DNA of 64,000 bases from Macrostomum lignano (Eukaryota), in assembly GCA_002269645.1 (NCBI GenBank), contig NIVC01002490.1, positions 1-64,000 of the forward strand, read 5' to 3'. Below, one piece after another: positions 24,684-58,699 of this stretch (position 1 is the first letter of the stretch; every line of letters starts with the position of its first letter). Position numbers and translations under genes: made by a program. Below the pieces are notes generated by a model that did not search any database, was not told the origin of the DNA, and worked only from the letters and a program-made list of their open reading frames with translations.

Positions 24684-27600
24684 CTACTCAGACTTGACTT
24701 TGTCCCCGGCATCGCCGCTCGATGGCTCGGCCTCGTCAAAGCTCTGGCCGAATTCGTTTGTGCGACTTTTGTCCACGGGGTACAGCCTGATGGGGGATGG
24801 GGTGGATGGCGGATAGATCTCAGGAGAGATATGGGATAGATCTCACGATAGATATGGGATAGATCTCAGATAGATATGGAATGGATCTCAGGATACATAT
24901 GGCACAGATCCCAGGATAGATATGGGATAGATTTCAGGATAGATATGTCACAGATCCCAGGATAGATATGGGATAGATCTCACGATAGATATGGGATAGA
25001 TCTCACGATAGATATGGAATAGAGTTTAGGATATATATGGGATATTTTGGGATGGATTTTAGGATAGATGTCGAATATAAACGTAAAAAAAATATCGAAT
25101 TAAAAAATCGGCCTCACCAGCGCTGGTACATGTAGATGATGAAGATGACGTCATCGCGGAAGCAGGCCAGCCGGTGCGCGGTGGGCATTCGGATAATAAA
25201 AGCGAACAGGTCGTCAATGAAGGTATTGAAGGCTTTGTAGGTCAGCGCCTTCCACGGCAGGTGGGCCACGGATTTCATTTTGTAGTTAATGAACAGCTGA
25301 GGCGTCATGAACAGGAAGCCGAAGGCGTACACACCTGGGGAGGGGCGGGAAGGTGTAGGGTTGACAGCTGAACAGAGGCTGGCCCGGCAACTGACACTCT
25401 GGGAGGCTGGCCCAGCAACTGAAACTCTGGGAGGCTAGCCCAGCAACTGATGAGGATCTGAGAGGCTGGCCCAGCAACTGATGAGGATCTGAGAGGCTGG
25501 CCCGCAACTGATGAGGATCTGGGAGGCTGGCCCGCAACTGATGAGGATCTGGGAGGCTGGCCCGCAACTGATGAGGATCTGGGAGGCTGGCCCGCAACTG
25601 ATGAGGATCTGGGAGGCTGGCCCGCAACTGATGAGGATCTGGGAGGCTGGCCCGCAACTGATGAGGATCTGGGAGGCTGGCCCGCAACTGATGAGGATCT
25701 GGGAGGCTGGCCCGCAACTGATGAGGATCTGGGAGGCTGGCCCAGCAGCTGAGGATCTGGGAAGGTGGCGGTGGCCTTGCAACTGACACTCTGGGAGGCT
25801 GGCCCAGCAACTGACACCCTGGGAGGCTGGCCCAGCAACTGACACTCTGGGAGGCTGGCCCAGTAACTGACACCCTGGGAGGCTGGCCCAGTAACTGACA
25901 CTCTGGGAGGCTGGCCCAGTAACTGACACCCTGGGAGGCTGGCCCAGCAACTGACACTCTGGGAGGCTGGCCCAGCAACTGACACTCTGGGAGGCTGGCC
26001 CAGCAACTGACACCCTGGGAGGCTGGCCCAGCAACTGACACTCTGGGAGGCTGGCCCAGCAACTGACACCCTGGGAGGCTGGCCCAGCAACTGACACTCT
26101 GGGAGGCTGGCCCGGCAACTGACACTCTGGGAGGCTGGCCCAGCAACTGACACTCTGGGAGGCTGGCCCAGCAACTGACACCCTGGGAGGCTGGCCCAGC
26201 AACTGACACTCTGGGAGGCTGGCCCAGCAACTGAAGATCTGGGAGGCTGGTGGTCCAGCAAATTCCGGTTAACTTGATGCAGCAAAACCTCGGAGCGCAG
26301 TCTCCTGAACATCGCTGTACTCATAGAAGGCACAAGTTCTCATCTAAAACCAACTCCAGCGATTGCTCATTCGGTGGTACAAAAAGAGGAGCTTCAAGTG
26401 TGCTCAGGAAACTGCAGGCCTCACCCCAGCATTTCAACCCTCGAGCTGAGGCAGGCTAGGAAGAGAGGCAAAGTGAAAGCAAACAGAAGAGGAACATTCA
26501 GAGCACCTCTCTTATCTATTTTTCTGCGCTAAAACTTTTCAAAGGGGTATGCAGTTAGTGCAATAAGTATATCGGCAGATATCTGACATTGATAGGACAA
26601 AAATTGATACAAAAAGCCAATATCCCTGTCTGGCCCAGGCTCTCGGGAGAGATGAGGAAGTAAGCTAGGCTGAGTATCAATGCTTTGTGAGATGCGAGTG
26701 AGGAGGGAAGGGCTACTACTATATATAGTGGCCACTGCTCACTCCCATACAGGAAGACAGGCTATCCGGCTCTCTTAGGGAGGGATATAAATACACAGCC
26801 GCATATGACAGCCAGCGATGACTGCTGCGACCTTGAATGACCCCTCCCTATTGTTGACATTACAGCATTACAGACAACATAGCCGTTTGCAGACAGAAAC
26901 AGCCAAAAACAGACAGTTACAGACAAAACTGCCAAAAACAGGCAGTTACAGACAGAACAGCCAAAAAACAATCAGTTACAGACAGAAACAGCCAAAAACA
27001 GGCAGTTGCAGACAGAAACAGCCAAAAACAGGCAGTTGCAGACAGAAACAGCCAAAAACAGGCAGTTGCAGACAGAAACAGCCAAAAACAGGCAGTTGCA
27101 GACAGAAACAGCCAAAAACAGGCAGTTGCAGACAGAAACAGCCAAAAACAGGCAGTTACAGACAAAACAGCCAAAAACAGGCAGTTACAGACAGAAACAG
27201 CCAAAAACAGGCAGTTACAGACAGAAACAGCCAAAAACAGGCAGTTACAGACAAAACAGCCAAAAACAGGCTGTTGCAGACAGAAACAGCCAAAAACAGG
27301 CAGTTACAGACAAAACAGCCAAAAACAGGCAGTTACAGACAAAACAGCCAAAAACAGACAGTTACAGACAGAAACAGCTAAAAACAGGCAGTTACAGACA
27401 GAAATCGCCAAAAACAGGCGGTTACAGACAGAAACAGCCAAAAAACAGACAGTTACAGACAGAAACAGCCAAAACAGGCAGTTACAGACAGAAATCGCCA
27501 AAAACAGGCGGTTACAGACAGAAACAGCCAAAAAACAGGCAGTTACAGACAGAAACAGCCAAAACAGGCAGTTACAGACAGAAACCGCCAAAAACAGACA

Positions 27601-30600
27601 GTTACATACAGAAACAGCCTAAAACAGACAGTTACAGACAGAAACAGCCAAAAACAGGCAGTTACAGACAGAAATCGCCAAAAACAGGCGGTTACAGACA
27701 GAAACAGCCAAAAAACAGGCAGTTACAGACAGAAACAGCCAAAACAGGCGGTTACAGACAGAAACAGCCAAAAAACAGGCAGTTACAGACAAAACAGCCA
27801 AAAACAGGCAGTTACAGACAAAACAGCCAAAAACAGACAGTTACAGACAGAAACAGCCAAAAACAGGCAGTTACAGACAGAAATCGCCAAAAACAGGCGG
27901 TTACAGACAGAAACAGCCAAAAAACAGGCAGTTACAGACAGAAACAGCCAAAACAGGCAGTTACAGACAGAAATCGCCAAAAACAGGCAGTTACAGACAG
28001 AAATCGCCAAAAACAGGCAGTTACAGACAGAAACAGCCAAAAACAGGCAGTTACAGACAGAAATCGCCAAAAACAGGCGGTTACAGACAGAAACAGCCAA
28101 AAAACAGGCAGTTACAGACAGAAACAGCCAAAACAGGCAGTTACAGACAGAAATCGCCAAAAACAGGCAGTTACAGACAGAAATCGCCAAAAACAGGCAG
28201 TTACAGACAGGAACAGCCAAAACAGGCAGTTACAGACAAAACTGCCAAAAACAGGCGGTTACAGACAGGAACAGCAAAAAAACAGACAGTTACAGACAGA
28301 AACAGCCAAAAACAGACAGTTACAGATAAAACAATTAGAAATGGTCAGCCCTACAAATTCTACTATGGATTGGGAAACAAGATCACTCACAATTAGCCAT
28401 GCTGTTGATAGTCCAAGAGTACCAGGACTTGTGCGGCACGTACATCAGCGAGTAGATTGGGGCTCCTGCGCACAGAGGCAGCATCACATAGGACAGATAG
28501 CGAGTGCCCTGGGAATCCAGGGCCCCGGTCTTGCGCTCCGCCTCCGATCGTGGCGCCCAGGCCAGGCCGCGAAAGCTGATTGACACCTCGAAGATGCGAT
28601 GCAGGTGAGGGGGCGGCAGTAACAGCTGTTGATTACAGGGGTCAACGACCCCCCTTCCTTAGAATCCAAACAACAATTGAGATTCGAGACCCAGGGGCAA
28701 TGACCCCACCCTTTGAACCCAAGCCACAATTAAGGTTCCAGGCCCCAGGGTCAATGACCTCCTTTGAATCTAAACAACAACTCAGGTTCGAGACCCCAGG
28801 TACATGAACTTCTTAAACAACTCACAGTTGACTTCAACTGACACGCCAGGGGGTCATTGACCTCCCCTTAAAGGAAACATCAATCGACACGCCAGGGGTC
28901 AGTGACCTTCCCTTAAAGGGAAACATCAATCGACACGCCAGGGGTCAGTGACCTCCCCTTAAAGGAAACATCAATCGACACGCCAGGGGGTCATTGACCT
29001 CCCCTTAAAGGAAACATCAATCGACACGCCAGGGATCAGTGACCTCCCCTTAACGGAAACATCAATCGACACGCCAGGGGGTCAGTGACCTCCCCTTAAA
29101 GGAAATATCCAATCGACACGCCAGGGGTCAGTGACCTCCCCTTAAAGGAAACATCCAATCGACACGCCAGGGGGTCAGTGACCTCCCCTTAAAGGAAACA
29201 TCCAATCGACACGCCAGGGGTCAGTGACCTCCCCTTAAAGGAAACATCCAATCGACACGCCAGGGGGCAGTGACCTCCCCTTAAAGGAAACATCAATCGA
29301 CACGCCAGGGGTCAGTGGGTCAGTGACCTCCCCTTTGCCGAAAAATCGATATTCTGGCCCAGAGGGTCAGTGACCTCCCCTTTGCCGAAAAATCGATATT
29401 CTGGCCCAGAGGGTCAGTGACCTCCCCTTTGCCGAAAAATCGATATTCTGGCCCAGAGGGTCAGTGACCCCACTGCCAAAACCGAAAAGCGCCCTGAGCC
29501 TCACCTTGAACACCTTGGACAATTTCCACAGTTCGATGACGAGCTGCACAGCGGCGGGTGCCACCACCAGCAGGCTGGTCTTCTCCTCGGCCAGGTACAG
29601 CAGCACCACAAAGCCGCTGATGCAGCGCCACAACACGGCAGTGCTGGAGATGCCCACACTGCGGTCCATCTGGCGCCAGAATGCGATATCATTTTTGAAA
29701 GCCAGGAAATCGAAGACCAGGTGAAAGACGGACACGAAGATGGTCAGCAGCAGCAGGTAGAAATTGGTGTCGTTAAAAATTGCCTTCACATCGTCGATGT
29801 CGGTGTCGCGAAAGCCGAAGCTTTTCAACGATTCGACGGAGAGTTCCAGGGTCTGCAGGAGGCGAAGCTGCCCGATGCTCACGGGCTCGAAGCGGAGGGT
29901 GAGCAGGGCGCGAGTGTCCGTGGAGTTCACCTGGACCAGGTCGGCCTCTTTGAATGACAGCCGGCTGGCTGAGATGATTGGCAGGTAGGCGTCCTGCGAC
30001 TGAAGCCTGCATGCGGGGAATGAATTGATGAGGAATTCCATCACATTATATGACCTTGAGGTGATTCCGATTATTTTATCTAGATATATGACCTTGGGGA
30101 AATTCCACCAACATTATATGACTCTGGGGGTATTCCATCAATGGTATTTGACCTTGAGGTAATTCCATAAATATTATATGACCTTGAGGTGATTCCGATT
30201 ATTTTATCTAGATTATGACCTTGGGGAAATTCCACCAACGTTATATGACTCTGGGGGTATTCCATCAATGTTATTTGACCTTGGGGAAATTCCATCAATA
30301 TTATATGATCTTGAGGAAACTCCATCAATGCTATATGACCTTAAGGGAATTTGATAAATACCATACGGCCTTGAGGAAAGTCCATAAATATTATAGGACC
30401 TTGGGAAAACTTTAAGTAGATTCCACCCATCCAGGCGACTTTTCAGATTCAACACATTCCACACACTGACCTTGAGGAGGCTATCAAAGTAGATTGCCAC
30501 TAGGGGGGACATTCCAATTAGACGGATGACTTTACGGGCCTCAGATGGCCTTGGGGAAGAATATACTACTAGTATTTCAGATAACCTTGGGGGAACTCCA

Positions 30601-33600
30601 ATTCGTCTAGATGACTTTAATGGCATTCAAATGGTAAAAAATCGGGGCATCAGGGGTTCGAAATTCACAGAAAGCAGCAAAGTCCGACGCCTCACTTAAC
30701 AAGATGCTGCAGCTCCGGTGGAAAAGCATTCCGATCGAATGCGAACGGCGAATTCAGCGAGTTGATGGTCAGCACCGAGCGCCAGTGAATCCAAGGTGAG
30801 TCCGACTGCTAGCGGAGGGGCGGGTTTGCTTTTATGTGCCCGTGATACTAGTAACTAAATTAACACAGGTAATTCGATTCGTCGTGCAAGCGTTCCTCTT
30901 CAATATGGTATCTTATCTACAATAGCCCATACATCTATCCAGAATAACACACACACACACAAGAACGCACACAGCTATCCACAAGAACACACGCATCTGT
31001 CTACATTAACACACACAAATCTATCACACAATAACACACATCTATCCACAATAGAACACATCTAACCACAAGAACACGTCTCTAACCACAAGAACACACA
31101 CATCTAACCACAAGAACACTCACACACACACATATCCATCCACAAGAACACACACACATCTAACCACACAAACACACACACACACATCTATCCACAAAAA
31201 AAACACACACACACACATCTACCCACACAAACACACACACACACATCTATCCACACAAACACACACACACACATCTATCCACAAACACACACACACACAC
31301 ACATCTAACCACAAGAACACACACATCTATCCACAAGAACGCACAAATCAAACCACAAGAACACACATCTATCCACAAAAACACACACATCTATCCACAA
31401 AAACACACACACATTTAACCACAAGAACACACACACATCTATCCACAAGAACGCACAAATCAAACCACAAGAACACACATCTAACCACGAGAACACACAT
31501 CTATCACACAAGAACACATCTATCCACAATATAACACACATCTAACCACAAGAACGCACAAGTCTATCACACAAGAACACACAAATATATCACACAAGAA
31601 CACATCTATCCACAAGAACACAAATTGCATTAGCAAAGCCTCACTTTCGCACTTTCGCTGCCAACGCCCAACTTTGATGACGAATCCCCGCCGGCTCCCA
31701 GAAGGTTCCGAGCTCGAGCCCCAGGCTTCCTGAAGGCCGTCACGGTGATGGTGCTGTGAACAGCGTCAGGAGAGTGAACGCCGTGACTGGCACCCTCGGG
31801 GAACAGTGCCAGAGTGATCTGGTAGTCAGAAGCATTCTTTACTACTTGAACCGGCAGAGGCACAGAGAAGGTGCTGCAAGAAACAAGGGAAGACAATTTA
31901 TGTTACAGGTGGATTAATGTCTACGGCTAGCAGGGTCTGCGATATTCACAGGTCTCTGCTAGACTAAGAATCTTTGCATTTAACAAATACAGTAATATGC
32001 TTGCCTTTACATGTAAATATGTACAGAATCTGTCAGGCTGCTGTGTTCTGTTGTGTGTGCTGTTTTGTGTGCTGTTGTGTGTGCTGTTGTGTGTACTGTT
32101 TTGTGTGTTGTTGTGTGTGCTGTTGTGCGCTGTTTTGTGTGTTGTTGTGTGTGCTGTTATGTGTGCTGTTTTGTGTGTTGTTGTGTGTGCTGTTATGTGT
32201 GCTGTTTTGTGTGTTGTTGTGTGTGCTGTTATGTGTGCTGTTTTGTGTTGCTGTGTGTGCTGTTGTGTGTGCTGTTTTGTGTGCTGTTGTGTGTGCTGTT
32301 GTGTGTGTTGTTGTATGTGCTGTTTTGTGTGTTGTGTGTGCTGTTGTGTGTGCTGTTTTGTGTGTTGTTGTGTGTGCTGTTGTGTGCTGTTTTGTGTGTT
32401 GTTGTGTGTGCTGTTATGTGTGCTGTTTTGTGTGTTGTTGTGTGTGCTGTTATGTGTGCTGTTTTGTGTTGTTGTGTGTGCTGTTGTGTGTGCTGTTTTG
32501 TGTGTTGTTGTGTGTGCTGTTGTGTGTGCTGTTTTCAGTGGTCGTGGCGGGTCTCCTTCTAAATTTTCGCGCCACCCAAATTTTTTCGCGCCATAGGTAT
32601 CTATATATACACATACATGTGCAATCTCCAAAACTCGGTCAGCCGTGCGACTTAGTTTTAACAAAAATGCGACGTAGTTTTTGGCCAAAAATGCGACTTA
32701 CATATAAAAAAACCCGAAAGCAAAATTAACGCAACTTTGGGTAAACGGCAGGAGTAACTATGACTGTTTTATTAAGCTAAAATGCCTCGTCAGCTACTTA
32801 GTACTACTCTTCAGGTTATTTTTTGGGTGGGCATTTTTGCGACTTCCTTGATTGGCCGCCAAATCGGTCGGCCGGATCGGCCGACTCGGCCGACTGTTGC
32901 GCATGTATGTATATACAGCTAAGAATACCCAACAAATTCAGACATGCACATGTGAATATAAAGGTAAAAATAGTTATGGAGGTGCAGAACATCATGAAAT
33001 TTAATTATTCAAATGGGTGCCTGGAGTTTAAAGCTTCTTAATGAAAAAATAGCGCAAAAATGGGGGAATATTTTTCATATTTTCGCGCCATTAGCCATCC
33101 GCATTTTTCGCGCCATGGTCACAGAATTCGCGTATTCGCGCCATTTTCGCGCAGGCGCGAATTCGCGCCACCGCCACGACCACTGGCTGTTTTGTGTTGT
33201 TGTGTGCTGTTACGTGGTGTTGCGCATATAACATTAAGAAACCAGTCCAGATTTCACGCACCGTTCGAAGGGCTCCGTCAGTTTGAGGCTCCGCTCGGCG
33301 AAGATGAACTCCGCTTTGGTGCCCGGAACCGCTGAAGCCCTGCCGTAGAGCTCGAGCTGCGAGTTGGTTGGGTGCCAGTTCGAGTTTTTTTGGTATCTAA
33401 CTCAAACCACAGTAGATCAATATCTACCCACAGTAACCCCAGTGTCTACCCACAGTAGACCAATATCTATCCACAATAGCCAATATCTATCCACAATAAC
33501 TCAATATCTATCCACAATAACTCAATATCTATCCACAATAACTCAACATCTATCCACAATAACTCAACATCTATCCACAATAACTCAATATCTATCCACA

Positions 33601-35765
33601 ATAACTCAATATCTATCCACAATAACTCAACATCTATCCACAATAACTCAACATCTATCCACAATAACTCAACATCTATCCACAATAACTCAACATCTAT
33701 CCACAATAACTCAATATCTATCCACAATAACTCAACATCTATCCACAATAACTCAATATCTATCCACAATAACTCAACATCTATCCACAATAACTCAATA
33801 TCTATCCACAATAACTCAACATCTATCCTCAAAAACTCAATATCTATCCACAATAACTCAACATCTATCCACAATAACTCAATATCTATCCACAATAACT
33901 CAACATCTATCCTCAAAAACTCAATATCTATCCACAATAACTCAATATCTATCCACAATAACTCAACATCTATCCACAATAACTCAACATCTATCCACAA
34001 TAACTCAACATCTATCCTCAAAAACTCAATATCTATCCACAATAACTCAATATCTATCCACAATAACTCAACATCTATCCTCAAAAACTCAATATCTATC
34101 CACAATAACTCAATATCTATCCACAATAACTCAACATCTATCCACAATAACTCAACATCTATCCACAATAACTCAACATCTATCCTCAAAAACTCAATAT
34201 CTATCCACAATAACTCAATATCTATCCACAATAACTCAACATCTATCCTCAAAAACTCAATATCTATCCTCAAAAACTCAATATCTATCCACAATAACTC
34301 AACATCTATCCACAATAACTCAATATCTATCCACAACAACTCAATATCTATCCACAATAACTCAACATCTATCCACAATAACTCAATATCTATCCACAAT
34401 AACTCAATATCTATCCACAATAACTCAATATCTATCCACAATAACTCAACATCTATCCACAATAACTCAACATCTATCCACAATAACTCAATATCTATCC
34501 ACAATAACTCAATATCTATCCACAATAACTCAATATCTATCCACAATAGCCAATATCTATCCACAATAACTCAATATCTATCCACAATAACTCAACATCT
34601 ATCCACAATAACTCAATATCTATCCACAACAACTCAATATCTATCCACAATAACTCAATATCTATCCACAATAACTCAATATCTATCCACAATAACTCAA
34701 TATCTATCCACAATAACTCAATATCTATCCACAATAACTCAACATCTATCCACAATAACTCAATATCTATCCACAATAACTCAACATCTATCCACAATAA
34801 CTCAACATCTATCCTCAAAAACTCAATATCTATCCTCAAAAACTCAATATCTATCCACAATAACTCAACATCTATCCACAATAACTCAATATCTATCCAC
34901 AACAACTCAATATCTATCCACAATAACTCAACATCTATCCACAATAACTCAACATCTATCCTCAAAAACTCAATATCTATCCACAATAACTCAATATCTA
35001 TCCACAATAACTCAACATCTATCCACAATAACTCAATATCTATCCACAATAACTCAATATCTATCCACAATAACTCAATATCTATCCACAATAACTCAAT
35101 ATCTATCCACAATAACTCAATATCTATCCACAATAACTCAACATCTATCCACAATAACTCAATATCTATCCACAACAACTCAATATCTATCCACAATAAC
35201 TCAATATCTATCCACAATAACTCAATATCTATCCACAATAACTCAATATCTATCCACAATAACTCAATATCTATCCACAATAACTCAACATCTATCCACA
35301 ATAACTCAATATCTATCCACAATAACTCAACATCTATCCACAATAACTCAACATCTATCCATGTTGTACAGTAACCAAATATCTATCCACAATAACCCTC
35401 TATCTATCTACAGTCCCTCAATATCGATCCACACTAGCCCAATATCTGTCAAAACTAACGCTAATATGCTTTAAAATATGTCTAATACGTAAACTTCCCA
35501 AGCTACTCAAATATCTATCTACAATAACTCAAAAACCTAATCAGTTTAAAGTAAATACTCTGAACGCCAAAAAGTCAGCCTCCATTCAGCCTGCATCACT
35601 CACGGTAAACTTGGCTTTGCCCAAAGGAAACGCTGGCTGCAAGCAGTAGGCAGTGGACGAGGAGGCCGTGCATTCTTTCGGATAGAAGATGGACAGAAAC
35701 TGGTAGCCCACGTAGGCCACGTAGATGCAGGCCAGACTGATCAGAACTCCGCCGAATGAAGGCAT
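24684..35765 (-). CDS. CLPTM1L: Cleft lip and palate transmembrane protein 1-like (ER lipid scramblase), 8 exons, 537 aa
   Basis: Hand-assembled exons: 35765-35604, 33356-33262, 31873-31645, 30805-30696, 30006-29505, 28586-28391, 25334-25118, 24786-24684. All are GT-AG with consistent phases and total 1614 nt. Motifs: FDFLAFKNDI.FW, KSWYSW, YAFGFLFMTPQLFINYKMKSVAHLPWKALTYKAFNTFIDD, HRLACFRDD, YQRWLYPVDK. The length is close to human CLPTM1L (538 aa). Confidence 0.93.
24830..25070. repeat. Minisatellite, ~21-bp unit GATAGATATGGGATAGATCTC (CLPTM1L intron 7)
   Basis: Tandem unit read directly. Confidence 0.88.
25375..26250. repeat. Compound minisatellite, 28/30-bp units CTGGGAGGCTGGCCC(A)GCAACTGA(CACT/TGAGGAT) (CLPTM1L intron 6)
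   Basis: Two variant blocks of one unit family. Confidence 0.95.
26880..28340. repeat. Minisatellite, ~30-bp unit ACAGACAGAAACAGCCAAAAACAGGCAGTT (CLPTM1L intron 6)
   Basis: Tandem unit read directly. Confidence 0.97.
28830..29470. repeat. Minisatellites: ~41-43-bp unit GACACGCCAGGGGTCAGTGACCTCCCCTTAAAGGAAACATCAATC, then a 47-bp unit (about 3 copies) (CLPTM1L intron 5)
   Basis: Tandem units read directly; both share the core GGGTCAGTGACCTCCCC. Confidence 0.93.
30040..30640. repeat. Degenerate minisatellite, ~42-bp unit with core TATGACCTTG...TTCCATCAA (CLPTM1L intron 4)
   Basis: Degenerate tandem unit read directly. Confidence 0.82.
30945..31622. repeat. AC-rich minisatellite, unit ~ACACACATCTATCCACAAGA (CLPTM1L intron 3)
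   Basis: Tandem unit read directly. Confidence 0.92.
32040..32535. repeat. TG-rich minisatellite (TGTGTGCTGT-type), continuing briefly after the MITE at 33186-33215 (CLPTM1L intron 2)
   Basis: Tandem unit read directly. Confidence 0.93.
32536..33185. mobile_element. Non-autonomous hAT-like DNA transposon (MITE), 650 bp
   Basis: Perfect 15-bp TIRs CAGTGGTCGTGGCGG (32536-32550) and CCGCCACGACCACTG (33171-33185). 8-bp TSD GCTGTTTT (32528-32535 and 33186-33193). Subterminal TTCGCGC repeats near both ends. An 8-bp TSD with CAG termini is characteristic of hAT elements. Confidence 0.85.
33410..35400. repeat. Minisatellite, 21-bp unit AATATCTATCCACAATAACTC (~95 copies) (CLPTM1L intron 1)
   Basis: Tandem unit read directly; it explains the spurious long ORFs at 33364-35343. 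Confidence 0.98.
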
Positions 35766-48510: not shown

Positions 48511-48825
48511 TCCACACTGTAGTCGGGCCACTTGCCCCTTACTGTACAAAGAATCTAGCGAGGTCTACTAAGTTCTGTTAGCCCTATTAGTTCGGGACAA
48601 AAAAACAAATTCAATCGAATGGAAAATGTCAGTCAGATAGGCGGAGGGAACTGTCTCTTCGCTAACTCTGCTGCTTTGAAGGGCATTCGTTTGCCAGCAA
48701 GCATCTCAATATTAGTAAATATCAACTATGTCAATGTTTGAGGATCTCCATGCACAGGTCTGAGAGTAGAAATCCCCCAGACTAAGAAAAAAAGTCAACA
48801 GACATTTCATCAGCAGGCTTGAGGT

Positions 48826-49445: not shown

Positions 49446-49449
49446 TCAA

Positions 49450-49758: not shown

Positions 49759-50814
49759 AACACACGAGTACCAAAGCAGAATCAGGTTTCGTCACGAAGA
49801 GGGGCACACTTGGCTGATCAATAATTGCTATTCGAAACTCCTCTTCAGCCAGTCACGCTCGGTGCATATAAAGGTATTTAGTGTCTCAGGACTAGAGCAC
49901 ACTATATATAAAATACACCCGCACTGCAGGATACGCAACTGGAAAGTGCACACAAAGGGTTGGCAGCAGGGGAGCACAGGGAATTCGGGAGTTTATATGG
50001 GGCATATCAGTAAGACGCGACTTTCTGCTTAAATAATGAGAGCTCACGCCATGACACTGAGAGCTTAGCCAAGGGAAAAAACTGACTGAGAGAGAAGGTC
50101 AGTAGAGAACAGGCAGACTAAGGGCTTAGGTCTCAGATGCTAGGAACTAGCCAGACAGACATGATATACATGTAGCCTCCAGTGTATAATTAAAACTTAA
50201 GATATAAAACTAACGCTCAAAGGTTAGTGTTGAAATTTCTGCAGAAAGTAAATGGAAATTGGCTGAAAAGACCTCAAAACTGACAAATCTCAAATCCCAT
50301 TTATGGAATTTCATACTTTTAAAGTACAAGTATCGCATGAATATCAGGTAAAAATACTCCGCTATAAGCCAATAAGTCAGGCAGAAAAATGGCTAGATCT
50401 AAATGATCAAAGCAGCACGCAATTTATTAGTAGGCAAAAATCACAGCGAAGCCCCATATAATATGACGAAATCAAGTTGAAGCAGAGATGCAGGTACACT
50501 GCAGCCCAGGGTGTAGCAGAGAAGGGGAAGAGACAGGGGATTAGCAATGGGGATATTTCAGCCTGTCTGTAGGCTGTGCAGGTCATAACAAGGTTTCACG
50601 CTCCAGTAGTCGTTTCCATTAAATGTAGGAGGCACACTTCGGCTGATCAAAGGGGCGCTATCTCTCATTATTAGCACAGGTCCGTGCAGCCCAGCACTCA
50701 GCCGGTTCAAGGACAATAAAGGTCGCAAAAGGAAAGAAAAATACACGTAAAATATTCTGAGATTAGGTGGGATGAATGAGAGTTGCAGGGTGGGAAAACA
50801 CCTACCTGAGGGGT

Positions 50815-51260
50815 AAGAAGAGACGGGATCTCAGAGATGAGAAGAGACGGGATCTCAGAGATGAGAAGAGACGGGATCTCAGAGATGAGAAGAGACGGGA
50901 TCTCAGAGATGAGAAGAGACGGGATCTCAGAGATGAGAAGAGACGGGATCTCTGAGATGAGAAGAGACGGAATCTCAGAGATGCGAAGAGACGGGATCTC
51001 AGAGATGAGAAGAGACGGGATCTCTGAGATGAGAAGAGACGGAATCTCAGAGATGCGAAGAGACGGGATCTCAGAGATGAGAAGAGACGGAATCTCAGAG
51101 ATGAGAAGAGACGGGATCTCAGAGATGAGAAGAGACGGAATCTCAGAGATGAGAAGAGACGGAATCTCAGAGATGAGAAGAGACGGGATCTCAGAGATGA
51201 GAAGAGACGGGATCTCTGAGATGAGAAGAGACGGAATCTCAGAGGTGAGAAGAGACGGGA
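50815..51260. repeat. Minisatellite, 24-bp unit AGACGGGATCTCAGAGATGAGAAG (~18 copies)
   Basis: Tandem unit read directly. Confidence 0.97.
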
Positions 51261-51794
51261 TGATAAAATCTCTAACATCTCTCATACCTAAGCAACTAAA
51301 AGCCTGCAGTTAAAGGACTGCAGTTAAAAAATCGAAGTAAAGACACAAAACTACTCGTGCTCAATCGTAAACAACCAAGAGGTCGAGTATTATTATTAAT
51401 TACATCCATAAAGCAGTACGATTATTACTGAGCAGTACTGTAACAACATATATGCAATAACTGAAAGACAAGCATTAGGCAGTTTAATAGCAAATAGAGC
51501 ACATTTGAGTACTGTAGAAGCTTATTACAAGACTGAACATATGGCTCTACAAAAAAGCACAATCTAACGACAACAAATAAGCATTCAGAAGCAGATAATT
51601 TTTCTTTTCAAATCCATAACGCCAGAGCTAACTATTGGTGGCAATGAAGTTTAAATTGACTTAATACTTCAAAAAGGATGGTTATACATGTAAATACCTT
51701 GCCGACTAGACAAACATAACAAGCCGCACTTTGTACTGCTGATCAATGGTGTGCAATGCAGAAAGAGCCGGACAGGAAGTGCTTTATCGACTTT

Positions 51795-51845
51795 GTCTGT
51801 CTGTCTGTGTGTCTGTCTGTCTGCCTGTCTGTCTGTGTGTCTGCC

Positions 51846-51886
<41 letters not shown>

Positions 51887-51889
51887 GCC

Positions 51890-51936
<47 letters not shown>

Positions 51937-52009
51937 GTGTCTGCCTGCCTGTCTGTCTGTCTGTCTGCCTGTCTGTCTGTGTGTCTGTCTGTCTGTGTCT
52001 GTCTGTCTG

Positions 52010-52082
<73 letters not shown>

Positions 52083-52090
52083 GTGTCTGC
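51795..52090. repeat. (GTCT)n microsatellite directly after the LST8 stop
   Basis: Read directly. Confidence 0.95.
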
Positions 52091-53993
52091 TCAGTCATCA
52101 GCATAGCTGTCATCAACAAAGGCCAGGCAGGTCATGGGCTTGGCTGAGGTGCTGCCGTGCCCGGCAGACTTAGTGGAGCCGCGGTACTCCCGCCTGGGCT
52201 TGGCGCCGTCGTCAATGGAGTAGAGCCGGGCGCAGCCGTCGGAGGACACGGTGACAACGAACTCGGAGTCGGCCGAGAAGGCGCAATCCCAAACCCATTT
52301 GTCGGCTCCCGATAGTTCAACCTTAAGCGGGTCGGGCAGCGGTCATTGGTTGGGTCTGCCTGCGGTAGGCCTAACTCAATTTTTGCTTTTCTAAGCTTTA
52401 AATCTGCATAGCGGAGAGTGCTGTGGTGCCGCTGTGGGACAGGGAATTGCTTCTGTGGGATTCTATCCCATTAGCTACTGGCTTATATGGCTTTTCATAC
52501 AGTGCGGCGGCTATCGGAGGGACTGGTATTAATGGGGAGTAATAGAAAGAGGAGAGAATAAAAATAAGGAAAGAGAAGGGGAGATAAAAGAAATTGGAGA
52601 GAGTGGGAGAAATGAAGAGGGAATTCTCTCCCCCCTCTCGAGAGAGGGAGCGAGAGGGGGGAGAGAGGGAGCAAGAGGGGGGAGAGAGGGAGGAGAGGGA
52701 GAGGGGGTTGGAGAGGAAGAAGAGACGAGGAGGAGAAATGGAGAGGGAGAAAGAGGGAATAGAGAGAGGGAGGAGTGGGAGAGGGGGGAGAGTGGGAGGG
52801 AGAGATGGAGAGGGAGAGAGAGGGGGAGAAGGAGAGAAGGAGAGTGAAAGAGACGGGGGAGAGTGGGAGGGGAGAGAGGGAGAGATGGAGAGGGAGAGAG
52901 AGGGAGAGGGAGAGACGGGAGGGAGAGATGGAGATAGAGGGAGGGACTCTGGAGAGAGAGGAGGGCAAGTGTCTCGGGTAAAGAAAAGGTAAAAGGTAAG
53001 AAACCGAAGCCCAGCAAGACCCAACAGAGAAGAAAGGGAGAAGGGAGAAGGGAGAAGAGAAGAAGGGGAGAGAGCTCAACTCAAGCGCACCTGTTTCTGA
53101 TAGTCGGACGTTTTCCAAACGTTGCACAGGCGGTCGGAGCCGCAGGTGGCCAGCAGGGTGCTGTCAGGTGAGAAGGCGCACCTCAGGCCGTAGCCAGAGT
53201 GGGCAGCGATCCGAGCCTTGGGGACGGCCTGGCTGCCCGACACGTTGGTGACGGCGCTGGCCAGCGACCACATGAAGCAGCTGCCGGTGTTGGCCAGAGC
53301 GGCCAGGTGCGTGCCGGCCTGATTGACAGCCACGGACTGAATCCGGGCGTCGAGGTCGGGCACCAGCGAGCAGCTCTGGTTGCTGCGCAGATCCCAGATG
53401 TGCACCGCGCCGGTGGCGTCGCCGACAAATAACTCGATTTGATTGGGGTGCAGGCACACCGACGTGATGGGGCCGTTCACCTGCCCAGGTGAAAGTGCGA
53501 TAGCAGACTAATATCAACACTAAAGCGAACACTGAGGGAACGGGCCAACAGACAGACTAGTTCAGACAGTCATGGACACCAAGACAGTCAGTAGGGTGCA
53601 CTGAAAGAGAAAGACGGACAAAAAGACACGTATTGACAGACAGGTAGACACACACGCACACGCTAAGATAGACAGACGAACACGTGAAGACAAAGAGACT
53701 AAAGTCTCGGTCTAAAGACACAGACAGACAGACAGACACACAGACAGACAGTCAGACAGACAGACAGACAGACAGACAGACAGGCAGACAGGCAGACAGA
53801 CAGACAGACACAGAGACAGACAGACAGACAGACAGACAGGCAGGCAGGCAGACAGACAGACAGGCAGGCAGACAGGCAGATAGAAAGACAGATAGACAGC
53901 CAGACACACAGACAGTCAGGCAGACAAACAGACAGACACAGACAGTCAGGCAGACACACAGACAGACACAGACAGTCAGGCAGACAAACAGAA

Positions 53994-54038
<45 letters not shown>

Positions 54039-54056
54039 GGCAGACAGACAGACAGG

Positions 54057-54106
<50 letters not shown>

Positions 54107-54537
54107 GCGGGCAGACATAGTGAATAAGACAGCATTAGCAGTGATGATTTGCACGCCAACCCCACCTGGAACAGTCTGCTGCAGGGGTTGCCGCCCTGCC
54201 CGCCCCTGGCGTGTCGCAAGTCCCACACCCGGCAGACGCAGTCCTCGCCGCCGCTGTACATCCACTTGCCGTGGCCGTCGAAGCCAACAGCCGTGATGTT
54301 CTTCTGCATGTCGAAGGACAGCGAAGGCGAGGTGACCAACGTGTCGCCGATGTCGTACAGGCGGATGTGCTCGTAGCCGGCGGCTGCCAAGGTGCGCCTG
54401 TCTGGGGAAATGCTGAGCGCATTCACCTGGGAGCCGGCGTGCTCAAGCTGCCGGATAAGCTGAGCACTGTAGGCCTGCCACAGCTTGATCACATTCTCGT
54501 AGCCGGCCGTGGCCAAAATGATCGGCTCCTCAAACAT
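52091..54537 (-). CDS. MLST8: Target of rapamycin complex subunit LST8 (WD40), 3 coding exons, 330 aa
   Basis: Exons 54537-54166, 53480-53091 and 52321-52091. Motifs [57 protein letters not shown] and [11 protein letters not shown]...VT.SSD..ARL align with human mLST8. Acceptor CCCCAG|CTA-ATG lies 3 nt upstream. Confidence 0.94.
52530..53075. repeat. Polypurine (GA/GGA-rich) low-complexity tract (LST8 intron 2)
   Basis: Almost entirely A/G on the plus strand. Confidence 0.9.
53715..54115. repeat. (CAGA)n microsatellite (LST8 intron 1)
   Basis: Read directly. Confidence 0.95.
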
Positions 54538-54589
54538 TAGCTGGGGCTGCAGGCAGGAACGGTACATTGGGATGTTATTGTCAGCTCAC

Positions 54590-57085
54590 AATCAATCCCA
54601 TTGTTTTCTAGCTGCCCTAAATCAAATCCATTGTGTTCTAGCTGCCCTAAATCATTTCCATTGTGTTTTAGCTACCCTAAATCAAATCCATTGTGTTCTA
54701 GCTGCCCTAAATCATTTCCATTGTGTTCTAGCTGCCCTAAATCAAATCCATTGTGGTCTAGCTGCCCTAAATCATTTCCATTGTGTTCTAGCTGCCCTAA
54801 ATCAAATCCATTGTTGTCTAGCTGCCCTAAATCATTTCCATTGTGTTTTAGCTACCCTAAATCATTTCCATTGTGTTCTAGCTAACCTAAATCATTTCCA
54901 TTGTGTTCTAGCTAACCTAAATCATTTCCATTGTGTTCTAGCTAACCTAAATCATATCCATTGTGTTCTAGCTAACCTAACTCATATCCATTGTGTTCTA
55001 GCTAACCTAAATCATTTCCATTGTGTTCTAGCTAACCTAAATCATATCCATTGTGTTCTAGCTAACCTAAATCATATCCATTGTGTTCTAGCTACCCTAA
55101 ATCATTTCCATTGTGTTCTAGCTGCCCTAAATCATATCCATTGTGTTCTAGCTAACCTAAATCATTTCCATTGTGTTCTAGCTGCCCTAAATCAAATCCA
55201 TTGTGTTCTAGCTAACCTAAATCATATCCATTGTGTTCTAGCTGCCCTAAATCAAATCCATTGTGTTCTAGCTAACCTAAATCAAATCCATTGTGTTTTA
55301 GCTACCCTAAATCAAATCCATTGTGTTCTAGCTGCCCTAAATCAAATCCATTGTGTTCTAGCTGCCCTAAATCATATCCATTGTGTTCTAGCTGCCCTAA
55401 ATCATTTCCATTGTGTTTTAGCTACCCTAAATCATTTCAATTGTGTTCTAGCTACCCTAAATCATTTCCATTGTGTTCTAGCTAACCTAAATCATTTCCA
55501 TTGTGTTCTAGCTACCCTAAATCATTTCCATTGTGTTCTAGCTGCCCTAAATCAAATCCATTGTGTTCTAGCTGCCCTAAATCATTTCCATTGTGTTCTA
55601 GCTGCCCTAAATCATATCCATTGTGTTCTAGCTAACCTAAATCATTTCCATTGTGTTCTAGCTAACCTAAATCATTTCCATTGTGTTCTAGCTAACCTAA
55701 ATCAAATCCATTGTGTTCTAGCTGCCCTAAATCAAATCCATTGTGTTCTAGCTAACCTAAATCATATCCATTGTGTTCTAGCTAACCTAAATCATATCCA
55801 TTGTGTTCTAGCTGCCCTAAATCAAATCCATTGTGTTTTAGCTAACCTAAATCATATCCATTGTGTTCTAGCTGCCCTAAATTAAATCCATTGTGTTCTA
55901 GCTAACCTAAATAATTTCCATTGTGTTCTAGCTAACCTAAACCATATCCATTGTGTTCTAGCTAACCTAAATCATATCCATTGTGTTCTAGCTAACCTAA
56001 ATCATATTCATTGTGTTCTAGCTGCCCTAAATCAAATCCATTGTGTTCTAGCTAACCTAAATCATATCCATTGTGTTCTAGCTGCCCTAAATCATATCCA
56101 TTGTGTTCTAGCTGCCCTAAATCAAATCCATTGTGTTCTAGCTGCCCTAAATCAAATCCATTGTGTTCTAGCTAACCTAAATCATATCCATTGTGTTCTT
56201 GCTGCCCTAAATCAAATCCATTGTGTTCTAGCTGCCCTAAATCAAATCCATTGTGTTCTAGCTAACCTAAATCATATCCATTGTGTTCTTGCTGCCCTAA
56301 ATCATATCCATTGTGTTCTAGCTAACCTAAATCATTTCCATTGTGTTTTGGCTACCCTAAATCATTTCCATTGTGCTTTAGCTACCCTAAATCATATCCA
56401 TTGTGTTCTAGCTAACCTAAATCATATCCATTGTGTTCTAGCTAACCTAAATCATTTCCATTGTGTTCTAGCTAACCTAAATCAAAATCATTGTTTTCTA
56501 GCCACCCTAAATCAATGGTTTAGCCACCCTAAAACATCTCTTTTGCATTCTAGCCACCTTAAATTATTCTCATTGTGTTGTAGCCACCCTAAATTATCTC
56601 CATTGTAATTTGCCTACCCTAAATCATCCCCACTGTGATCTAGCTACCCTAAATCATCCCCACTGTAATCTAGCTACCCTAAATCATCCCCACTGTGATC
56701 TAGCTACCCTAAATCATCCTCACTGTGATCTAGCTACCCTAAATCATCCCCACTGTAATCTAGCTACCCTAAATCATCCTCACTGTAATCTAGCTACCCT
56801 AAATCATCCCCACTGTAATCTAGCTACCCTAAATCATCCCCACTGTGATCTAGCTACCCTAAATCATCCTCACTGTAATCTAGCTACCCTAAATCATCCT
56901 CACTGTAATCTAGCTACCCTAAATCATCCCCACTGTAATCTAGCTACCCTAAATCATCCCCACTGTAATCTAGCTACCCTAAATCATCCCCAATGTAATC
57001 TAGCTACCCTAAATCATCCCCACTGTGATCTAGCTACCCTAAATCATCCCCACTGTAATCTAGTTACCCTAAATCATTGTGTTGT
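54590..57085. repeat. Minisatellite, 30-bp unit TTGTGTTCTAGCT(G/A)(C/A)CCTAAATCAWWTCCA, changing at ~56600 to CACTGT(A/G)ATCTAGCTACCCTAAATCATCCC (~83 copies in total)
   Basis: Tandem unit read directly; it explains the spurious ORF 54509..55885. Confidence 0.98.
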
Positions 57086-57421
57086 AGCATCTTAATTACT
57101 GGATAGAATTTTTAACCAAAGTCAATAAGCGACAATGTGAAGACACAGAGCGAATACGATAGCAATAGCAATGCTGATTTGCATTGAAAATACTGAAAAG
57201 TACAAATTACTATTAACAAATAATAAAAATTCACCACTTGTCCATCGAAAAGGATTGTATACGTAGTATTTACTTGAAGTATTATTAGCAAAGTGGTATT
57301 TAAAATGCGTATGTATGTACATATCCAACTCAAATATACATGCGATGTACAAGAGCGCAAATATTATTATGCGCGTCAACAGCCAGCGTGCAACTTGCAA
57401 TTCTAATTAATGGTTCAATAA

Positions 57422-58155
57422 AAGCGCGCAGTTGATCTAGATGTCACTCACTAAGCGCGCAGTTGAGATCTAGATGTCACTCACTAAGCGCGCAGTTGAG
57501 ATCTAGATGTCAATCAAAGAGCGCGCAGTTGAGATCTAGATGTCAATCAAAGAGCGCGCAGTTGAGATCTAGATGTCAATCAAAGAGCGCACAGTTGAGA
57601 TCTAGATGTCACTCAATAAGCGCGCAGTTGAGATCTAGATGTCACTCAATAAGCGCGCAGTTGAGATCTAGATGTCACTCACTAAGCGCGCAGTTGAGAT
57701 CTAGATGTCAATCAAAGAGCGCACAGTTGAGATCTAGATGTCACTCAATAAGCGCGCAGTTGAGATCTAGATGTCAATCAAAGAGCGCGCAGTTGAGATC
57801 TAGATGTCACTCAATAAGCGCGCAGTTGAGATCTAGATGTCAATCAAAGAGCGCACAGTTGAGATCTAGATGTCACTCACTAAGCGCGCAGTTGAGATCT
57901 AGATGTCAATCAAAGAGCGCACAGTTGAGATCTAGATGTCAGTCAAAGAGCGCACAGTTGAGATCTAGATGTCACTCAATAAGCGCGCAGTTGAGATCTA
58001 GATGTCAATCAAAGAGCGCACAGTTGAGATCTAGATGTCAATCAAAGAGCGCACAGTTGAGATCTAGATGTCAATCAAAGAGCGCACAGTTGAGATCTAG
58101 ATGTCAATCAAAGAGCGCACAGTTGAGATCTAGATGTCACTCACTAAGTGCGCAG
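57422..58155. repeat. Minisatellite, 33-bp unit AGCGCGCAGTTGAGATCTAGATGTCAATCAAAG (~22 copies)
   Basis: Tandem unit read directly. Confidence 0.97.
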
Positions 58156-58330
58156 ATAATTATAGACTGAATGGGATAAGCACATAGTAAGTTTTACAGA
58201 TTCCTGTATCGACATGTTGGAAATTGATGTAGCCAGTTCCTCGCTAGCAAATAACCCAACTTTCTTGATAAAAAATATATCGATAGTTAGCATTACTTCC
58301 GTATTCTAAATCGAAAATAACGCGCTAGAA

Positions 58331-58699
58331 TTAATTGCCACCAATCAGTGACTCAACATTGGTGTAACGCCACTCGTCATCAACCAAGTCTCTGGCTAAT
58401 TGGCGCATCTCTCTGAGCCGGGACTCGTGCAGATCCCTGGCCAGTTGGGCGAGGCCCGTGTTCACCTCCTGGCACACCTGCAGGCGGGCGTCAACAGCGC
58501 GGCTGCTGTGCAGATCCGCCGCTGCAGCCGACGCTCCCGCAGATGAGCTGCCATCGATGGACCGCCTGAACAGCGGGCCGCAGAGGTCGTCCAGACCTAC
58601 AAAAGATGAACTGGCGGCTGCGGCTGCTGCTGCTGCTGCTGCGGCGCTTCCGCTGATGCGAATGCGAGGAGCCGCTGTGACCGAGGACGGCATCGACAT
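58331..58699 (-). CDS. ANAPC16: Anaphase-promoting complex subunit 16-like, single exon, 122 aa
   Basis: The C-terminus DLHESRLREMRQLARDLVDDEWRYTNVESLIG resembles my recollection of human APC16 ([33 protein letters not shown]). The Ser/Ala-rich low-complexity N-terminus and the size also fit. Codons are GC-rich. Confidence 0.72.
   Translation of the reverse strand: MSMPSSVTAAPRIRISGSAAAAAAAAAAASSSFVGLDDLCGPLFRRSIDGSSSAGASAAAADLHSSRAVDARLQVCQEVNTGLAQLARDLHESRLREMRQLARDLVDDEWRYTNVESLIGGN

What the first reader, a model, noticed from the sequence alone, without database searches (positions are those of the whole stretch)
24684..58699. Candidate five-gene SL trans-spliced operon: ANAPC16 > MLST8 > SIDT > TXNDC9 > CLPTM1L
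Seen in sequence: five unrelated conserved housekeeping genes lie head-to-tail on the minus strand, and the spacers are mostly tandem repeat. The four downstream genes each have a 3' splice acceptor just before the start codon: LST8 CCCCAG|CTA ATG (3 nt), SIDT GTCCTACAG|+11 nt to ATG 46947, TXNDC9 CCTGCAG|CTCA ATG (4 nt), CLPTM1L TTCCTTACTAACAG|+19 nt with a TACTAAC branch-point match. The most upstream gene (ANAPC16) has no such acceptor. Established: flatworms use spliced-leader trans-splicing, and orphan acceptors next to the ATG in co-oriented housekeeping genes are the signature of SL-resolved polycistrons. Inference: one transcript could couple a TOR subunit, a dsRNA/lipid transporter, a CCT co-chaperone, an ER scramblase and an APC/C subunit, with unusually long, minisatellite-filled intercistronic spacers. 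Counter-evidence: a TATA-like motif upstream of SIDT (~47320), and each acceptor could instead serve a cis-spliced 5'UTR exon.
Basis: partly seen in the sequence, partly recalled or inferred. Interest (0 to 1): 0.72.

Follow-up and report, generated by a model that had tools for sequence, protein, structure and literature searches.

The report
Two known-type flatworm operons, not five-gene
The five same-strand housekeeping genes are real, but the public Macrostomum lignano annotation and the spacer anatomy point to two adjacent spliced-leader operons (ANAPC16>LST8 and SIDT>TXNDC9>CLPTM1L) of a kind already described for this worm, so the finding is ordinary.

Summary
The window is Macrostomum lignano Mlig_3_7 contig NIVC01002490.1, bases 1-64000.

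- **Annotation.** GenBank locus tags on two homeologous copies give ANAPC16 and LST8 one transcriptional-unit prefix (g1, g2). SIDT and CLPTM1L share another (g1, g3). LST8 and SIDT never share a prefix.
- **Spacers.** Across three copies the stop-to-ATG spacers vary by more than 1 kb. Their non-repeat part stays constant at about 570, 2550, 1300 and 1060 nt.
- **Distance rule.** From conserved poly(A) hexamers, the repeat-adjusted distance is 65-310 nt for SIDT>TXNDC9 and TXNDC9>CLPTM1L. It is at most 566 nt for ANAPC16>LST8. It is 1.6-2.2 kb for LST8>SIDT, which fails the published 1 kb operon rule.
- **5' ends.** The annotated 5'-partial CDSs of LST8 and TXNDC9 on copy B begin exactly at the acceptors.

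Repeat-inflated operon spacers in this species were published in 2021. I had no direct spliced-leader or transcription-start reads. Verdict: two operons of a known kind, already annotated, of low interest.

The parts
58331..58699 (-). ANAPC16 CDS (122 aa, one exon). It is gene 1 of transcriptional unit 1.
   Evidence: Paralogs are tagged BOX15_Mlig018340g1 and Mlig014907g1.
54548..58330 (-). Spacer 1, ANAPC16 to LST8. Arrays at 57415-58143 (33-mer) and 54590-57077 (30-mer). Unique blocks of 187, 337 and 52 nt. No AATAAA or ATTAAA hexamer.
   Evidence: The non-repeat part is 569-576 nt in all three copies, while the total ranges from 2152 to 3793 nt.
54547..54552 (-). Probable spliced-leader (SL) acceptor of LST8: CTGCAG| within CCTGCAG|CCCCAGCTAATG. 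The exon would start at 54546. The terminal ATG of the SL would be in frame (MPQLM...).
   Evidence: Motif match. CYGCAG| is kept in all three copies. The copy B GenBank CDS (PQPMSEEP..., 333 aa, partial) starts at the first base after it.
52091..54537 (-). LST8 gene. Exons 54166-54537, 53091-53480 and 52091-52321 (330 aa). It is gene 2 of unit 1. It is not annotated on the window's own contig.
   Evidence: Tags Mlig018340g2 and Mlig014907g2. Missing from the called genes on NIVC01002490.1.
46960..52090 (-). Spacer 2, LST8 to SIDT, and the likely boundary between the two units. It holds about 2.5 kb of unique DNA in blocks of 464, 35, 1057, 322 and 655 nt. Candidate LST8 poly(A) hexamers: ATTAAA at 51488 and AATAAA at 50428.
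   Evidence: The repeat-adjusted distance is 1611-2192 nt. LST8 and SIDT have different unit prefixes in both copies where both tags are visible (A and B).
47317..47324 (-). TATAAATA motif about 360 nt upstream of the SIDT acceptor. It is a candidate core promoter for an outron-bearing SIDT pre-mRNA.
   Evidence: It is kept in all three copies, although the surrounding block is well conserved throughout. Function was not tested.
46959..46964 (-). Candidate SL acceptor of SIDT: CTACAG| within CCTACAG|CCGATCCAGCAATG.
   Evidence: It is kept in all three copies. The annotated transcripts begin 33-38 nt downstream, at 46920-46925, and not after an AG.
43105..46947 (-). SIDT gene. Exons 44801-46947 and 43105-43807. 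It is gene 1 of unit 2. The stop codon is followed at once by a (CTGT)n array.
   Evidence: Tags Mlig033109g1 (A), Mlig001878g1 (B) and Mlig024104g1 (window).
39399..43104 (-). Spacer 3, SIDT to TXNDC9. Arrays at 42621-43094, 41239-41965 and 39455-40661. Conserved poly(A) hexamers: AATAAA at 40939 and ATTAAA at 40695. The acceptor CCTGCAG| has its G at 39399.
   Evidence: The repeat-adjusted distance from hexamer to acceptor is 65-309 nt.
38699..39394 (-). TXNDC9 CDS (231 aa, one exon). It is the inferred gene 2 of unit 2. It is not annotated on the window's contig.
   Evidence: The copy B CDS (SMAGSN..., 232 aa, 5'-partial) begins at the first full codon after CAG|C.
35785..38698 (-). Spacer 4, TXNDC9 to CLPTM1L. 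Arrays at 37430-38588 and 35969-36662. Conserved AATAAA at 36803. Candidate acceptors: TAACAG| (G at 35785) and CATCAG| (G at 35806).
   Evidence: The repeat-adjusted distance is about 280-300 nt. The site 19 nt upstream is CTG in copy B.
24684..35765 (-). CLPTM1L gene, eight exons: 35604-35765, 33262-33356, 31645-31873, 30696-30805, 29505-30006, 28391-28586, 25118-25334 and 24684-24786. It is gene 3 of unit 2. ATTAAA at 24589 follows the stop codon.
   Evidence: The model is exactly GenBank PAA57434.1 / PAA90153.1, which carry the tags Mlig033109g3 and Mlig026092g1.

Best explanation
The locus holds two neighbouring spliced-leader (SL) operons of the kind already described for Macrostomum lignano.
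- Unit 1 starts upstream of ANAPC16 and runs through about 3.8 kb of spacer, 85% of it minisatellite, into LST8.
- Unit 2 starts upstream of SIDT and runs through TXNDC9 into CLPTM1L.

In each unit the upstream mRNA is cleaved and polyadenylated in a conserved unique block. The downstream mRNA gets the 35-nt SL (ending in AUG) at a CAG acceptor 4-40 nt before its ATG.

The tandem arrays are fast-changing filler in transcribed non-coding DNA. They lie in introns as much as in spacers.

The LST8-SIDT gap, with about 2.5 kb of unique DNA, is most likely a unit boundary with its own promoter. SIDT itself is probably also SL-spliced, at 46959.

What is shown: gene models, acceptor and hexamer conservation, constant unique spacer length, and shared annotation prefixes.
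What is inferred: SL use at each site, the poly(A) sites, and one promoter per unit.
For: 1. Organism and framework. NIVC is the M. lignano Mlig_3_7 assembly. About 30% of its genes are SL-spliced and 15% lie in operons. Repeats inflate operon spacers, and the rule is a repeat-adjusted distance below 1 kb.
2. Locus tags. ANAPC16 is g1 and LST8 is g2 of one prefix, on two separate copies. SIDT is g1 and CLPTM1L is g3 of prefix Mlig033109.
3. Annotated 5' ends. The 5'-partial CDSs start at the first base or first full codon after the predicted acceptor for LST8 on copy B and TXNDC9 on copy B. LST8 on copy A starts right after another AG (GAGGAG|).
4. Three-copy comparison. Unique spacer DNA is constant at 569-576, 2539-2632, 1298-1306 and 1047-1080 nt, while totals vary by up to 1.6 kb.
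5. Distances. Conserved AATAAA hexamers give adjusted distances of 65-309 and about 300 nt for the two junctions in unit 2. ANAPC16>LST8 is at most 566 nt. LST8>SIDT is 1611-2192 nt.
6. Room for a promoter. Only 52 nt (LST8) and 60 nt (TXNDC9) of unique DNA separate the last array from the ATG, which leaves little room for a proximal promoter.
7. Motif enrichment. YTNCAG lies next to the ATG in three of four downstream genes, P of about 2e-4.
Against: - I saw no SL-containing read, poly(A) read or capped 5' end. All RNA evidence is second-hand, through locus tags and CDS starts.
- The published units were assembled with up to 1000 multi-mappings per read. Arrays could therefore have bridged neighbouring genes artificially.
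- Unit 2 is split on copy B (CLPTM1L is Mlig023603g1) and probably on the window copy.
- Which contig carries Mlig033109g3 is inferred, not stated.
- The TXNDC9 tag is hidden, so its place as g2 is inferred.
- The annotated starts of TXNDC9 on copy A and of SIDT on all copies do not follow an AG.
- No canonical poly(A) hexamer follows ANAPC16.
- A GTGAG lies 42 nt upstream of the LST8 acceptor.
Confidence: 0.68

Rival explanations
1. One five-gene operon. A single promoter upstream of ANAPC16 drives a pre-mRNA of about 34 kb, and SL trans-splicing resolves all four downstream genes.
For: All five genes share one strand with no gene between them. A conserved YTNCAG acceptor lies 11 nt before the SIDT ATG. 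The authors note that RNA-seq units tend to break in repeat-rich spacers, so different prefixes do not prove separate transcription. Operons of up to nine genes are reported.
Against: SIDT is g1 in all three copies and never shares a prefix with LST8. The gap keeps about 2.55 kb of unique, mappable DNA in every copy. Its adjusted distance of 1.6-2.2 kb is above the 1 kb rule. The annotated SIDT transcripts start within 5 nt of one another (46920-46925) in all three copies, which suggests a sharp 5' edge rather than a unit broken in a repeat.
Confidence: 0.12
2. There is no operon. Each gene has its own promoter in the unique blocks of its upstream spacer. SL trans-splicing only trims outrons, and the shared unit prefixes are assembly artefacts from multi-mapped repeat reads.
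For: About 60% of SL-spliced genes in this species lie outside operons. Read mapping allowed 1000 multi-mappings. AT-rich unique blocks (for example 57078-57414 and 36663-37429) could hold promoters. CLPTM1L is its own unit on copy B.
Against: The same g1/g2 pairing of ANAPC16 and LST8 arose independently on two copies. The unique blocks nearest to LST8 and TXNDC9 are only 52 and 60 nt long. Repeat-adjusted distances of 65-570 nt fall in the operon mode of the published bimodal distribution.
Confidence: 0.14
3. The acceptors next to the ATGs serve cis-spliced non-coding 5' exons lying further upstream, not the spliced leader.
For: Flatworm acceptors are often shared between cis- and trans-splicing (PMC12582326). 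A conserved GTGAG lies 42 nt upstream of the LST8 acceptor.
Against: The GenBank 5'-partial CDSs of LST8 and TXNDC9 on copy B begin at the acceptor, so those transcript models have no upstream exon. At sites that resolve polycistrons, cis use is reported to be very rare.
Confidence: 0.05

Closest known systems
Macrostomum lignano SL operons with repeat-inflated spacers (transcriptional units and the TBONE pipeline of Wudarski et al. 2017, PMC5730564; operon census of Ustyantsev and Berezikov 2021, PMC8629364)
   Same: Same species and the same single 35-nt SL ending in ATG. Same acceptor motif YTNCAG. Same architecture of kilobase spacers that shrink to roughly 100-600 nt once repeats are removed. 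Conserved housekeeping genes. These very genes already carry shared unit prefixes in GenBank.
   Different: Nothing essential. The specific units are not discussed in any paper I could search. The window's own contig lacks LST8 and TXNDC9 gene models.
Caenorhabditis elegans SL2-type operons
   Same: A polycistronic pre-mRNA is resolved by 3'-end formation of the upstream gene coupled to SL trans-splicing of the downstream gene. Units hold two to eight mostly unrelated housekeeping genes.
   Different: C. elegans uses a dedicated SL2 and spacers of about 100 nt. Here there is one SL for all sites, and the raw spacers are 2-4 kb, made of minisatellites.
Operons of parasitic flatworms (Schistosoma, Echinococcus; PMC12582326)
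   Same: A single class of SL, an acceptor just upstream of the ATG, and few genes per operon.
   Different: Spacers there are usually 300 nt or less. I could not test synteny: the one TXNDC9 contig I retrieved had no neighbouring genes.

Membership tests
SL-resolved operon, M. lignano criteria (Ustyantsev and Berezikov 2021) | Adjacent genes on the same strand with no opposite-strand gene between them | tested here: met
   All five genes are on the minus strand. No called gene or sizeable non-repeat ORF lies on the other strand between them.
SL-resolved operon, M. lignano criteria (Ustyantsev and Berezikov 2021) | The downstream gene is SL trans-spliced, shown by SL-bearing reads at its first exon | not testable with these tools
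   No reads were available, so I used proxies. YTNCAG lies next to the ATG for LST8, SIDT and TXNDC9. The annotated 5' ends fall exactly at the acceptors for LST8 and TXNDC9 on copy B. CLPTM1L and SIDT rest on the motif or on the g-number only.
SL-resolved operon, M. lignano criteria (Ustyantsev and Berezikov 2021) | Repeat-adjusted intergenic distance below 1 kb: junctions ANAPC16>LST8, SIDT>TXNDC9 and TXNDC9>CLPTM1L | tested here: met
   At most 566 nt, 65-309 nt and about 280-300 nt respectively. Only tandem repeats were subtracted. Poly(A) sites were inferred from conserved hexamers.
SL-resolved operon, M. lignano criteria (Ustyantsev and Berezikov 2021) | Repeat-adjusted intergenic distance below 1 kb: junction LST8>SIDT | tested here: not met
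   1611-2192 nt from the two candidate hexamers, and 2539-2632 nt from the stop codon in all three copies. No dispersed-repeat copies of these blocks occur elsewhere in the window. I could not run a full transposon mask.
Polycistronic transcriptional unit (Wudarski et al. 2017) | One assembled RNA-seq unit containing several genes, shown by a shared Mlig prefix with .g1, .g2 and so on | tested here: met
   Met for ANAPC16+LST8 (two copies) and for SIDT+CLPTM1L (prefix Mlig033109, g1 and g3). Not met for LST8+SIDT in either copy where both tags are visible.
Operon in the strict sense | A single promoter or transcription start for the whole unit, with none inside the spacers | not testable with these tools
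   This needs RAMPAGE or CAGE data, or reporter assays. Sequence alone shows only that 52-60 nt of unique DNA precede LST8 and TXNDC9.

The most novel reading that the evidence does not exclude
The minisatellite arrays may be more than filler. Each array holds the same position in all three homeologs, while its copy number changes two- to three-fold. Every downstream acceptor lies 40-185 nt beyond the end of an array. The arrays could therefore be kept as spacing or Pol II pausing elements that uncouple upstream 3'-end formation from downstream SL trans-splicing. A more modest alternative is that read-through across the 2.5-kb LST8-SIDT gap links all five genes into one pre-mRNA of about 34 kb.
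Probability: 0.08. Interest if true: 0.45.

Novelty: already known. Interest (0 to 1): 0.15.

Why it matters
There is little new biology here. SL operons with repeat-inflated spacers are published for M. lignano, and these genes already carry shared transcriptional-unit tags in GenBank.

The useful by-products are practical.
- LST8 and TXNDC9 are intact on contig NIVC01002490.1 but have no gene models there.
- The LST8 acceptor is better placed at 54547 than at 54541.
- The three-homeolog comparison gives a clean local example of the published rule. Unique spacer length is conserved to within about 4% while the arrays vary by kilobases.
- The 655-nt block upstream of SIDT is a defined candidate promoter that could be tested with the transgenesis methods available for this worm.

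Tried and rejected
1. I first took the window to be NIVC01000126.1, because TXNDC9 protein P0001 maps there. That was wrong. That contig is a homeolog about 93% identical to the window. The window is NIVC01002490.1:1-64000.
2. I searched the supplements of three M. lignano papers for the gene names and Mlig identifiers, and the full-text library for the identifiers. Nothing was found.
3. I tried to test synteny in parasitic flatworms. One TXNDC9 homolog was not on record, and the other sits alone on a 14-kb contig.
4. My last homolog search, with a CLPTM1L exon at E <= 1e-40, returned nothing. I set the threshold badly. I recovered by building the exact 537-aa model and looking it up.
5. I considered the CCAAT-rich palindrome at 59.2-59.3 kb as a promoter. 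I rejected this because it is a MITE-like insertion present only in the window copy.
6. I asked whether the arrays avoid acceptor motifs on the sense strand. There is no signal: few arrays carry YTNCAG on either strand.
7. I looked for an SL RNA gene, Rfam families and tRNAs in the window. None were found.
8. The exact 231-aa TXNDC9 and my 330-aa LST8 are not in the protein collection, because GenBank holds only 5'-partial versions on the other contigs.
Full report
**Source.** The window is Macrostomum lignano assembly Mlig_3_7 (GCA_002269645.1), contig NIVC01002490.1, positions 1-64000. Locus L006, fetched through the window's ANAPC16 protein, maps to contig positions 48331-68699 (reversed). 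The part of it inside the window (48331-64000) matches base for base. NIVC is the accession of the annotated M. lignano genome (PMC5730564). Two further copies of the locus exist in the same assembly: contig A (NIVC01000126.1) and contig B (NIVC01000111.1). Exons are about 99.4% identical between copies and unique non-coding DNA is about 90-99% identical. I first mistook contig A for the window and corrected this.

Five genes lie head to tail on the minus strand.
- ANAPC16, 58331-58699. The evidence is weak but specific: the only Pfam hit is ANAPC16 (E = 0.003), the top PDB hit is human APC16 (E = 0.004), and UniRef names a paralog APC16.
- LST8, exons 54537-54166, 53480-53091 and 52321-52091. 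It matches mLST8 at E = 6e-97 with no gaps at the junctions.
- SIDT, exons 46947-44801 and 43807-43105 (Pfam SID-1, 1e-118).
- TXNDC9, 39394-38699.
- CLPTM1L, eight exons from 35765 to 24684. My 537-aa model is letter for letter the GenBank protein.

No gene is called on the other strand between them. The window has no Rfam family, tRNA or SL RNA gene. The stop-to-ATG spacers are 85, 51, 65 and 63% tandem repeat. Repeats are not particular to the spacers. The introns of these genes are 72% tandem repeat and the exons 0%. The 5.3 kb upstream of ANAPC16 is only about 7%.

**The acceptors.** The published trans-acceptor motif for this species is [T/C]TNCAG (PMC8629364). It occurs once per 300 nt outside repeats in this window. 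It ends 9, 11 and 4 nt before the ATGs of LST8, SIDT and TXNDC9. Three of four within 12 nt has a chance probability of about 2e-4, with the window size chosen after the fact.

Comparison of the three copies refines this picture.
- For LST8, C(T/C)GCAG| (G at 54547) is kept in all copies.
- For TXNDC9, the CAG| is kept in all copies.
- For SIDT, CCTACAG| is kept in all copies.
- ANAPC16 has no acceptor beside its ATG.

**Published framework.** In M. lignano about 30% of genes receive one 35-nt SL (CGGTCTCTTACTGCGAAGACTCAATTTATTGCATG) and about 15% lie in operons. [quoted passage not shown] The authors conclude that repeats add substantially to the intergenic distances within operons, and they use a repeat-adjusted cut-off of 1 kb. 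The genome annotation was built from RNA-seq 'transcriptional units'. The TBONE pipeline cut these into genes at peaks of SL-bearing reads and at poly(A) read ends. Genes of one unit share a prefix; the example given is unit Mlig030697.1 with genes Mlig030697.g1 and .g2.

**What the annotation says about this locus.** GenBank locus tags, visible for the paralogous copies, are as follows.

| Contig | ANAPC16 | LST8 | SIDT | CLPTM1L |
|---|---|---|---|---|
| A (NIVC01000126.1) | Mlig018340g1 | Mlig018340g2 | Mlig033109g1 | see below |
| B (NIVC01000111.1) | Mlig014907g1 | Mlig014907g2 | Mlig001878g1 | Mlig023603g1 |
| Window (NIVC01002490.1) | tag hidden | not annotated | Mlig024104g1 | see below |

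The CLPTM1L protein is identical on contig A and on the window contig. It carries two names, Mlig033109g3 and Mlig026092g1. The natural assignment is g3 to contig A, with the unlabelled TXNDC9 entry between SIDT and CLPTM1L as g2.

So ANAPC16 and LST8 were assembled as one unit on two separate copies. A unit with prefix Mlig033109 contains both SIDT and CLPTM1L. LST8 and SIDT never share a prefix, and SIDT is gene 1 every time.

**Annotated 5' ends.** Several GenBank CDSs are 5'-partial, so each starts at the first full codon of its transcript model.
- LST8 on copy B (PQPMSEEP...) begins at the first base after CCCGCAG|.
- TXNDC9 on copy B (SMAGSN...) begins at the first full codon after CAG|C.
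- LST8 on copy A (PIIL...) begins right after GAGGAG|.

At both LST8 sites the terminal ATG of the SL would be in frame (MPQ(L/P)M... or MPIIL...). This fits TBONE cuts at SL peaks, but it is indirect evidence. TXNDC9 on copy A and SIDT on all copies start at positions that do not follow an AG. I cannot explain those starts beyond transcript ends limited by read coverage.

**Spacer anatomy across three copies.** Every spacer is the same ordered series of unique blocks separated by arrays at fixed positions.

| Junction | Total stop-to-ATG length (nt) | Non-repeat part (nt) |
|---|---|---|
| ANAPC16>LST8 | 2152-3793 | 569-576 |
| LST8>SIDT | 4750-5574 | 2539-2632 |
| SIDT>TXNDC9 | 2261-3710 | 1298-1306 |
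| TXNDC9>CLPTM1L | 2400-3457 | 1047-1080 |

The hexamers AATAAA at 40939 and ATTAAA at 40695 (after SIDT) and AATAAA at 36803 (after TXNDC9) are kept in all copies. Measured from about 20 nt past these hexamers to the acceptors, the repeat-adjusted distances are:
- 65-309 nt for SIDT>TXNDC9;
- about 280-300 nt for TXNDC9>CLPTM1L;
- at most 566 nt for ANAPC16>LST8, measured from the stop codon because no canonical hexamer exists there;
- 1611-2192 nt for LST8>SIDT, measured from the two candidate LST8 hexamers (ATTAAA at 51488, AATAAA at 50428).

Three junctions pass the published rule and one fails. Only 52 and 60 nt of unique DNA lie between the last array and the ATGs of LST8 and TXNDC9. SIDT, by contrast, has a 655-nt unique block with a conserved TATAAATA at 47317-47324.

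**Conclusion.** The best reading is two adjacent SL operons, ANAPC16>LST8 and SIDT>TXNDC9>CLPTM1L, with a unit boundary and probably a promoter in the LST8-SIDT gap. SIDT is likely SL-spliced as a first gene. My confidence is about 0.68.

Rivals:
- one five-gene operon, 0.12. It is not excluded, because the authors say units tend to break in repeats;
- independent promoters, with the shared units being artefacts of multi-mapped reads, 0.14;
- cis-spliced 5' exons, 0.05.

I saw no SL, poly(A) or capped reads. The public browser tracks or a re-mapping would settle the question.

**Novelty.** This is already known as a kind, and these genes are already annotated as shared units. Interest is low.

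Noticed in passing
window 59164-59343: A near-perfect palindrome of about 180 nt (arms 91% complementary, centre CACGTG, four CCAAT/ATTGG boxes). It is an insertion found only in the window copy and absent from homeologs A and B. It is flanked by a direct repeat ATTATGTACA. It looks like a MITE rather than a promoter element.
   Followed up: yes
window 52091-54537 and 38699-39394: LST8 and TXNDC9 are intact on this contig (NIVC01002490.1), but the gene list for this contig has no model for either. Their homeologs on contigs A and B are annotated.
   Followed up: yes
window 52085-52093 and 43095-43107: The stop codons of LST8 and SIDT are each followed within 6-10 nt by a tetranucleotide array, (GACA)n and (CTGT)n on the sense strand. 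The 3' UTRs therefore begin with 290-470 nt of microsatellite. The same arrays sit at the same place in all three copies.
   Followed up: partly
window 42521-42603 and 53522-53604: An 83-nt stretch, 87% identical, is shared by the SIDT 3' region and LST8 intron 1. In both places it lies beside a (GACA)n-type array. It may be a small mobile element with a microsatellite tail.
   Followed up: no
window 58828-59051: A 30-mer array lies 130-350 nt upstream of the ANAPC16 ATG. Each unit carries CCTTCAG|GT, an acceptor-like motif followed by GT. Copy number differs between homeologs (the window has about two fewer). Its role is unknown.
   Followed up: partly
window 595-15383 (+): A very large open reading frame on the plus strand (795 + 4155 codons, cut off by the window start). 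It has VWD and C8 domains near the C-terminus, like a large lipid-transfer or apolipophorin-type protein.
   Followed up: partly
window 19324-20187 (+): A 288-codon ORF with a weak Neurensin/TMEM74 Pfam match (E = 1e-5, below the curated cut-off). It points towards the 3' end of CLPTM1L across about 4 kb of mostly tandem repeat.
   Followed up: no
window 62330-62620 (+) and 63369-64000 (-): There is a remnant of a DDE_3 (Tc1/mariner-type) transposase. A sixth gene on the same strand (365 aa, no Pfam family) ends at 63369, 4.7 kb upstream of ANAPC16. That gap is only about 7% tandem repeat.
   Followed up: partly
loci L001, L003-L005 compared with the window (spacer blocks): Which copies are closest changes from block to block: window and A are nearest in some blocks, A and B in others. 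This mosaic suggests gene conversion or recombination among the three homeologs.
   Followed up: no
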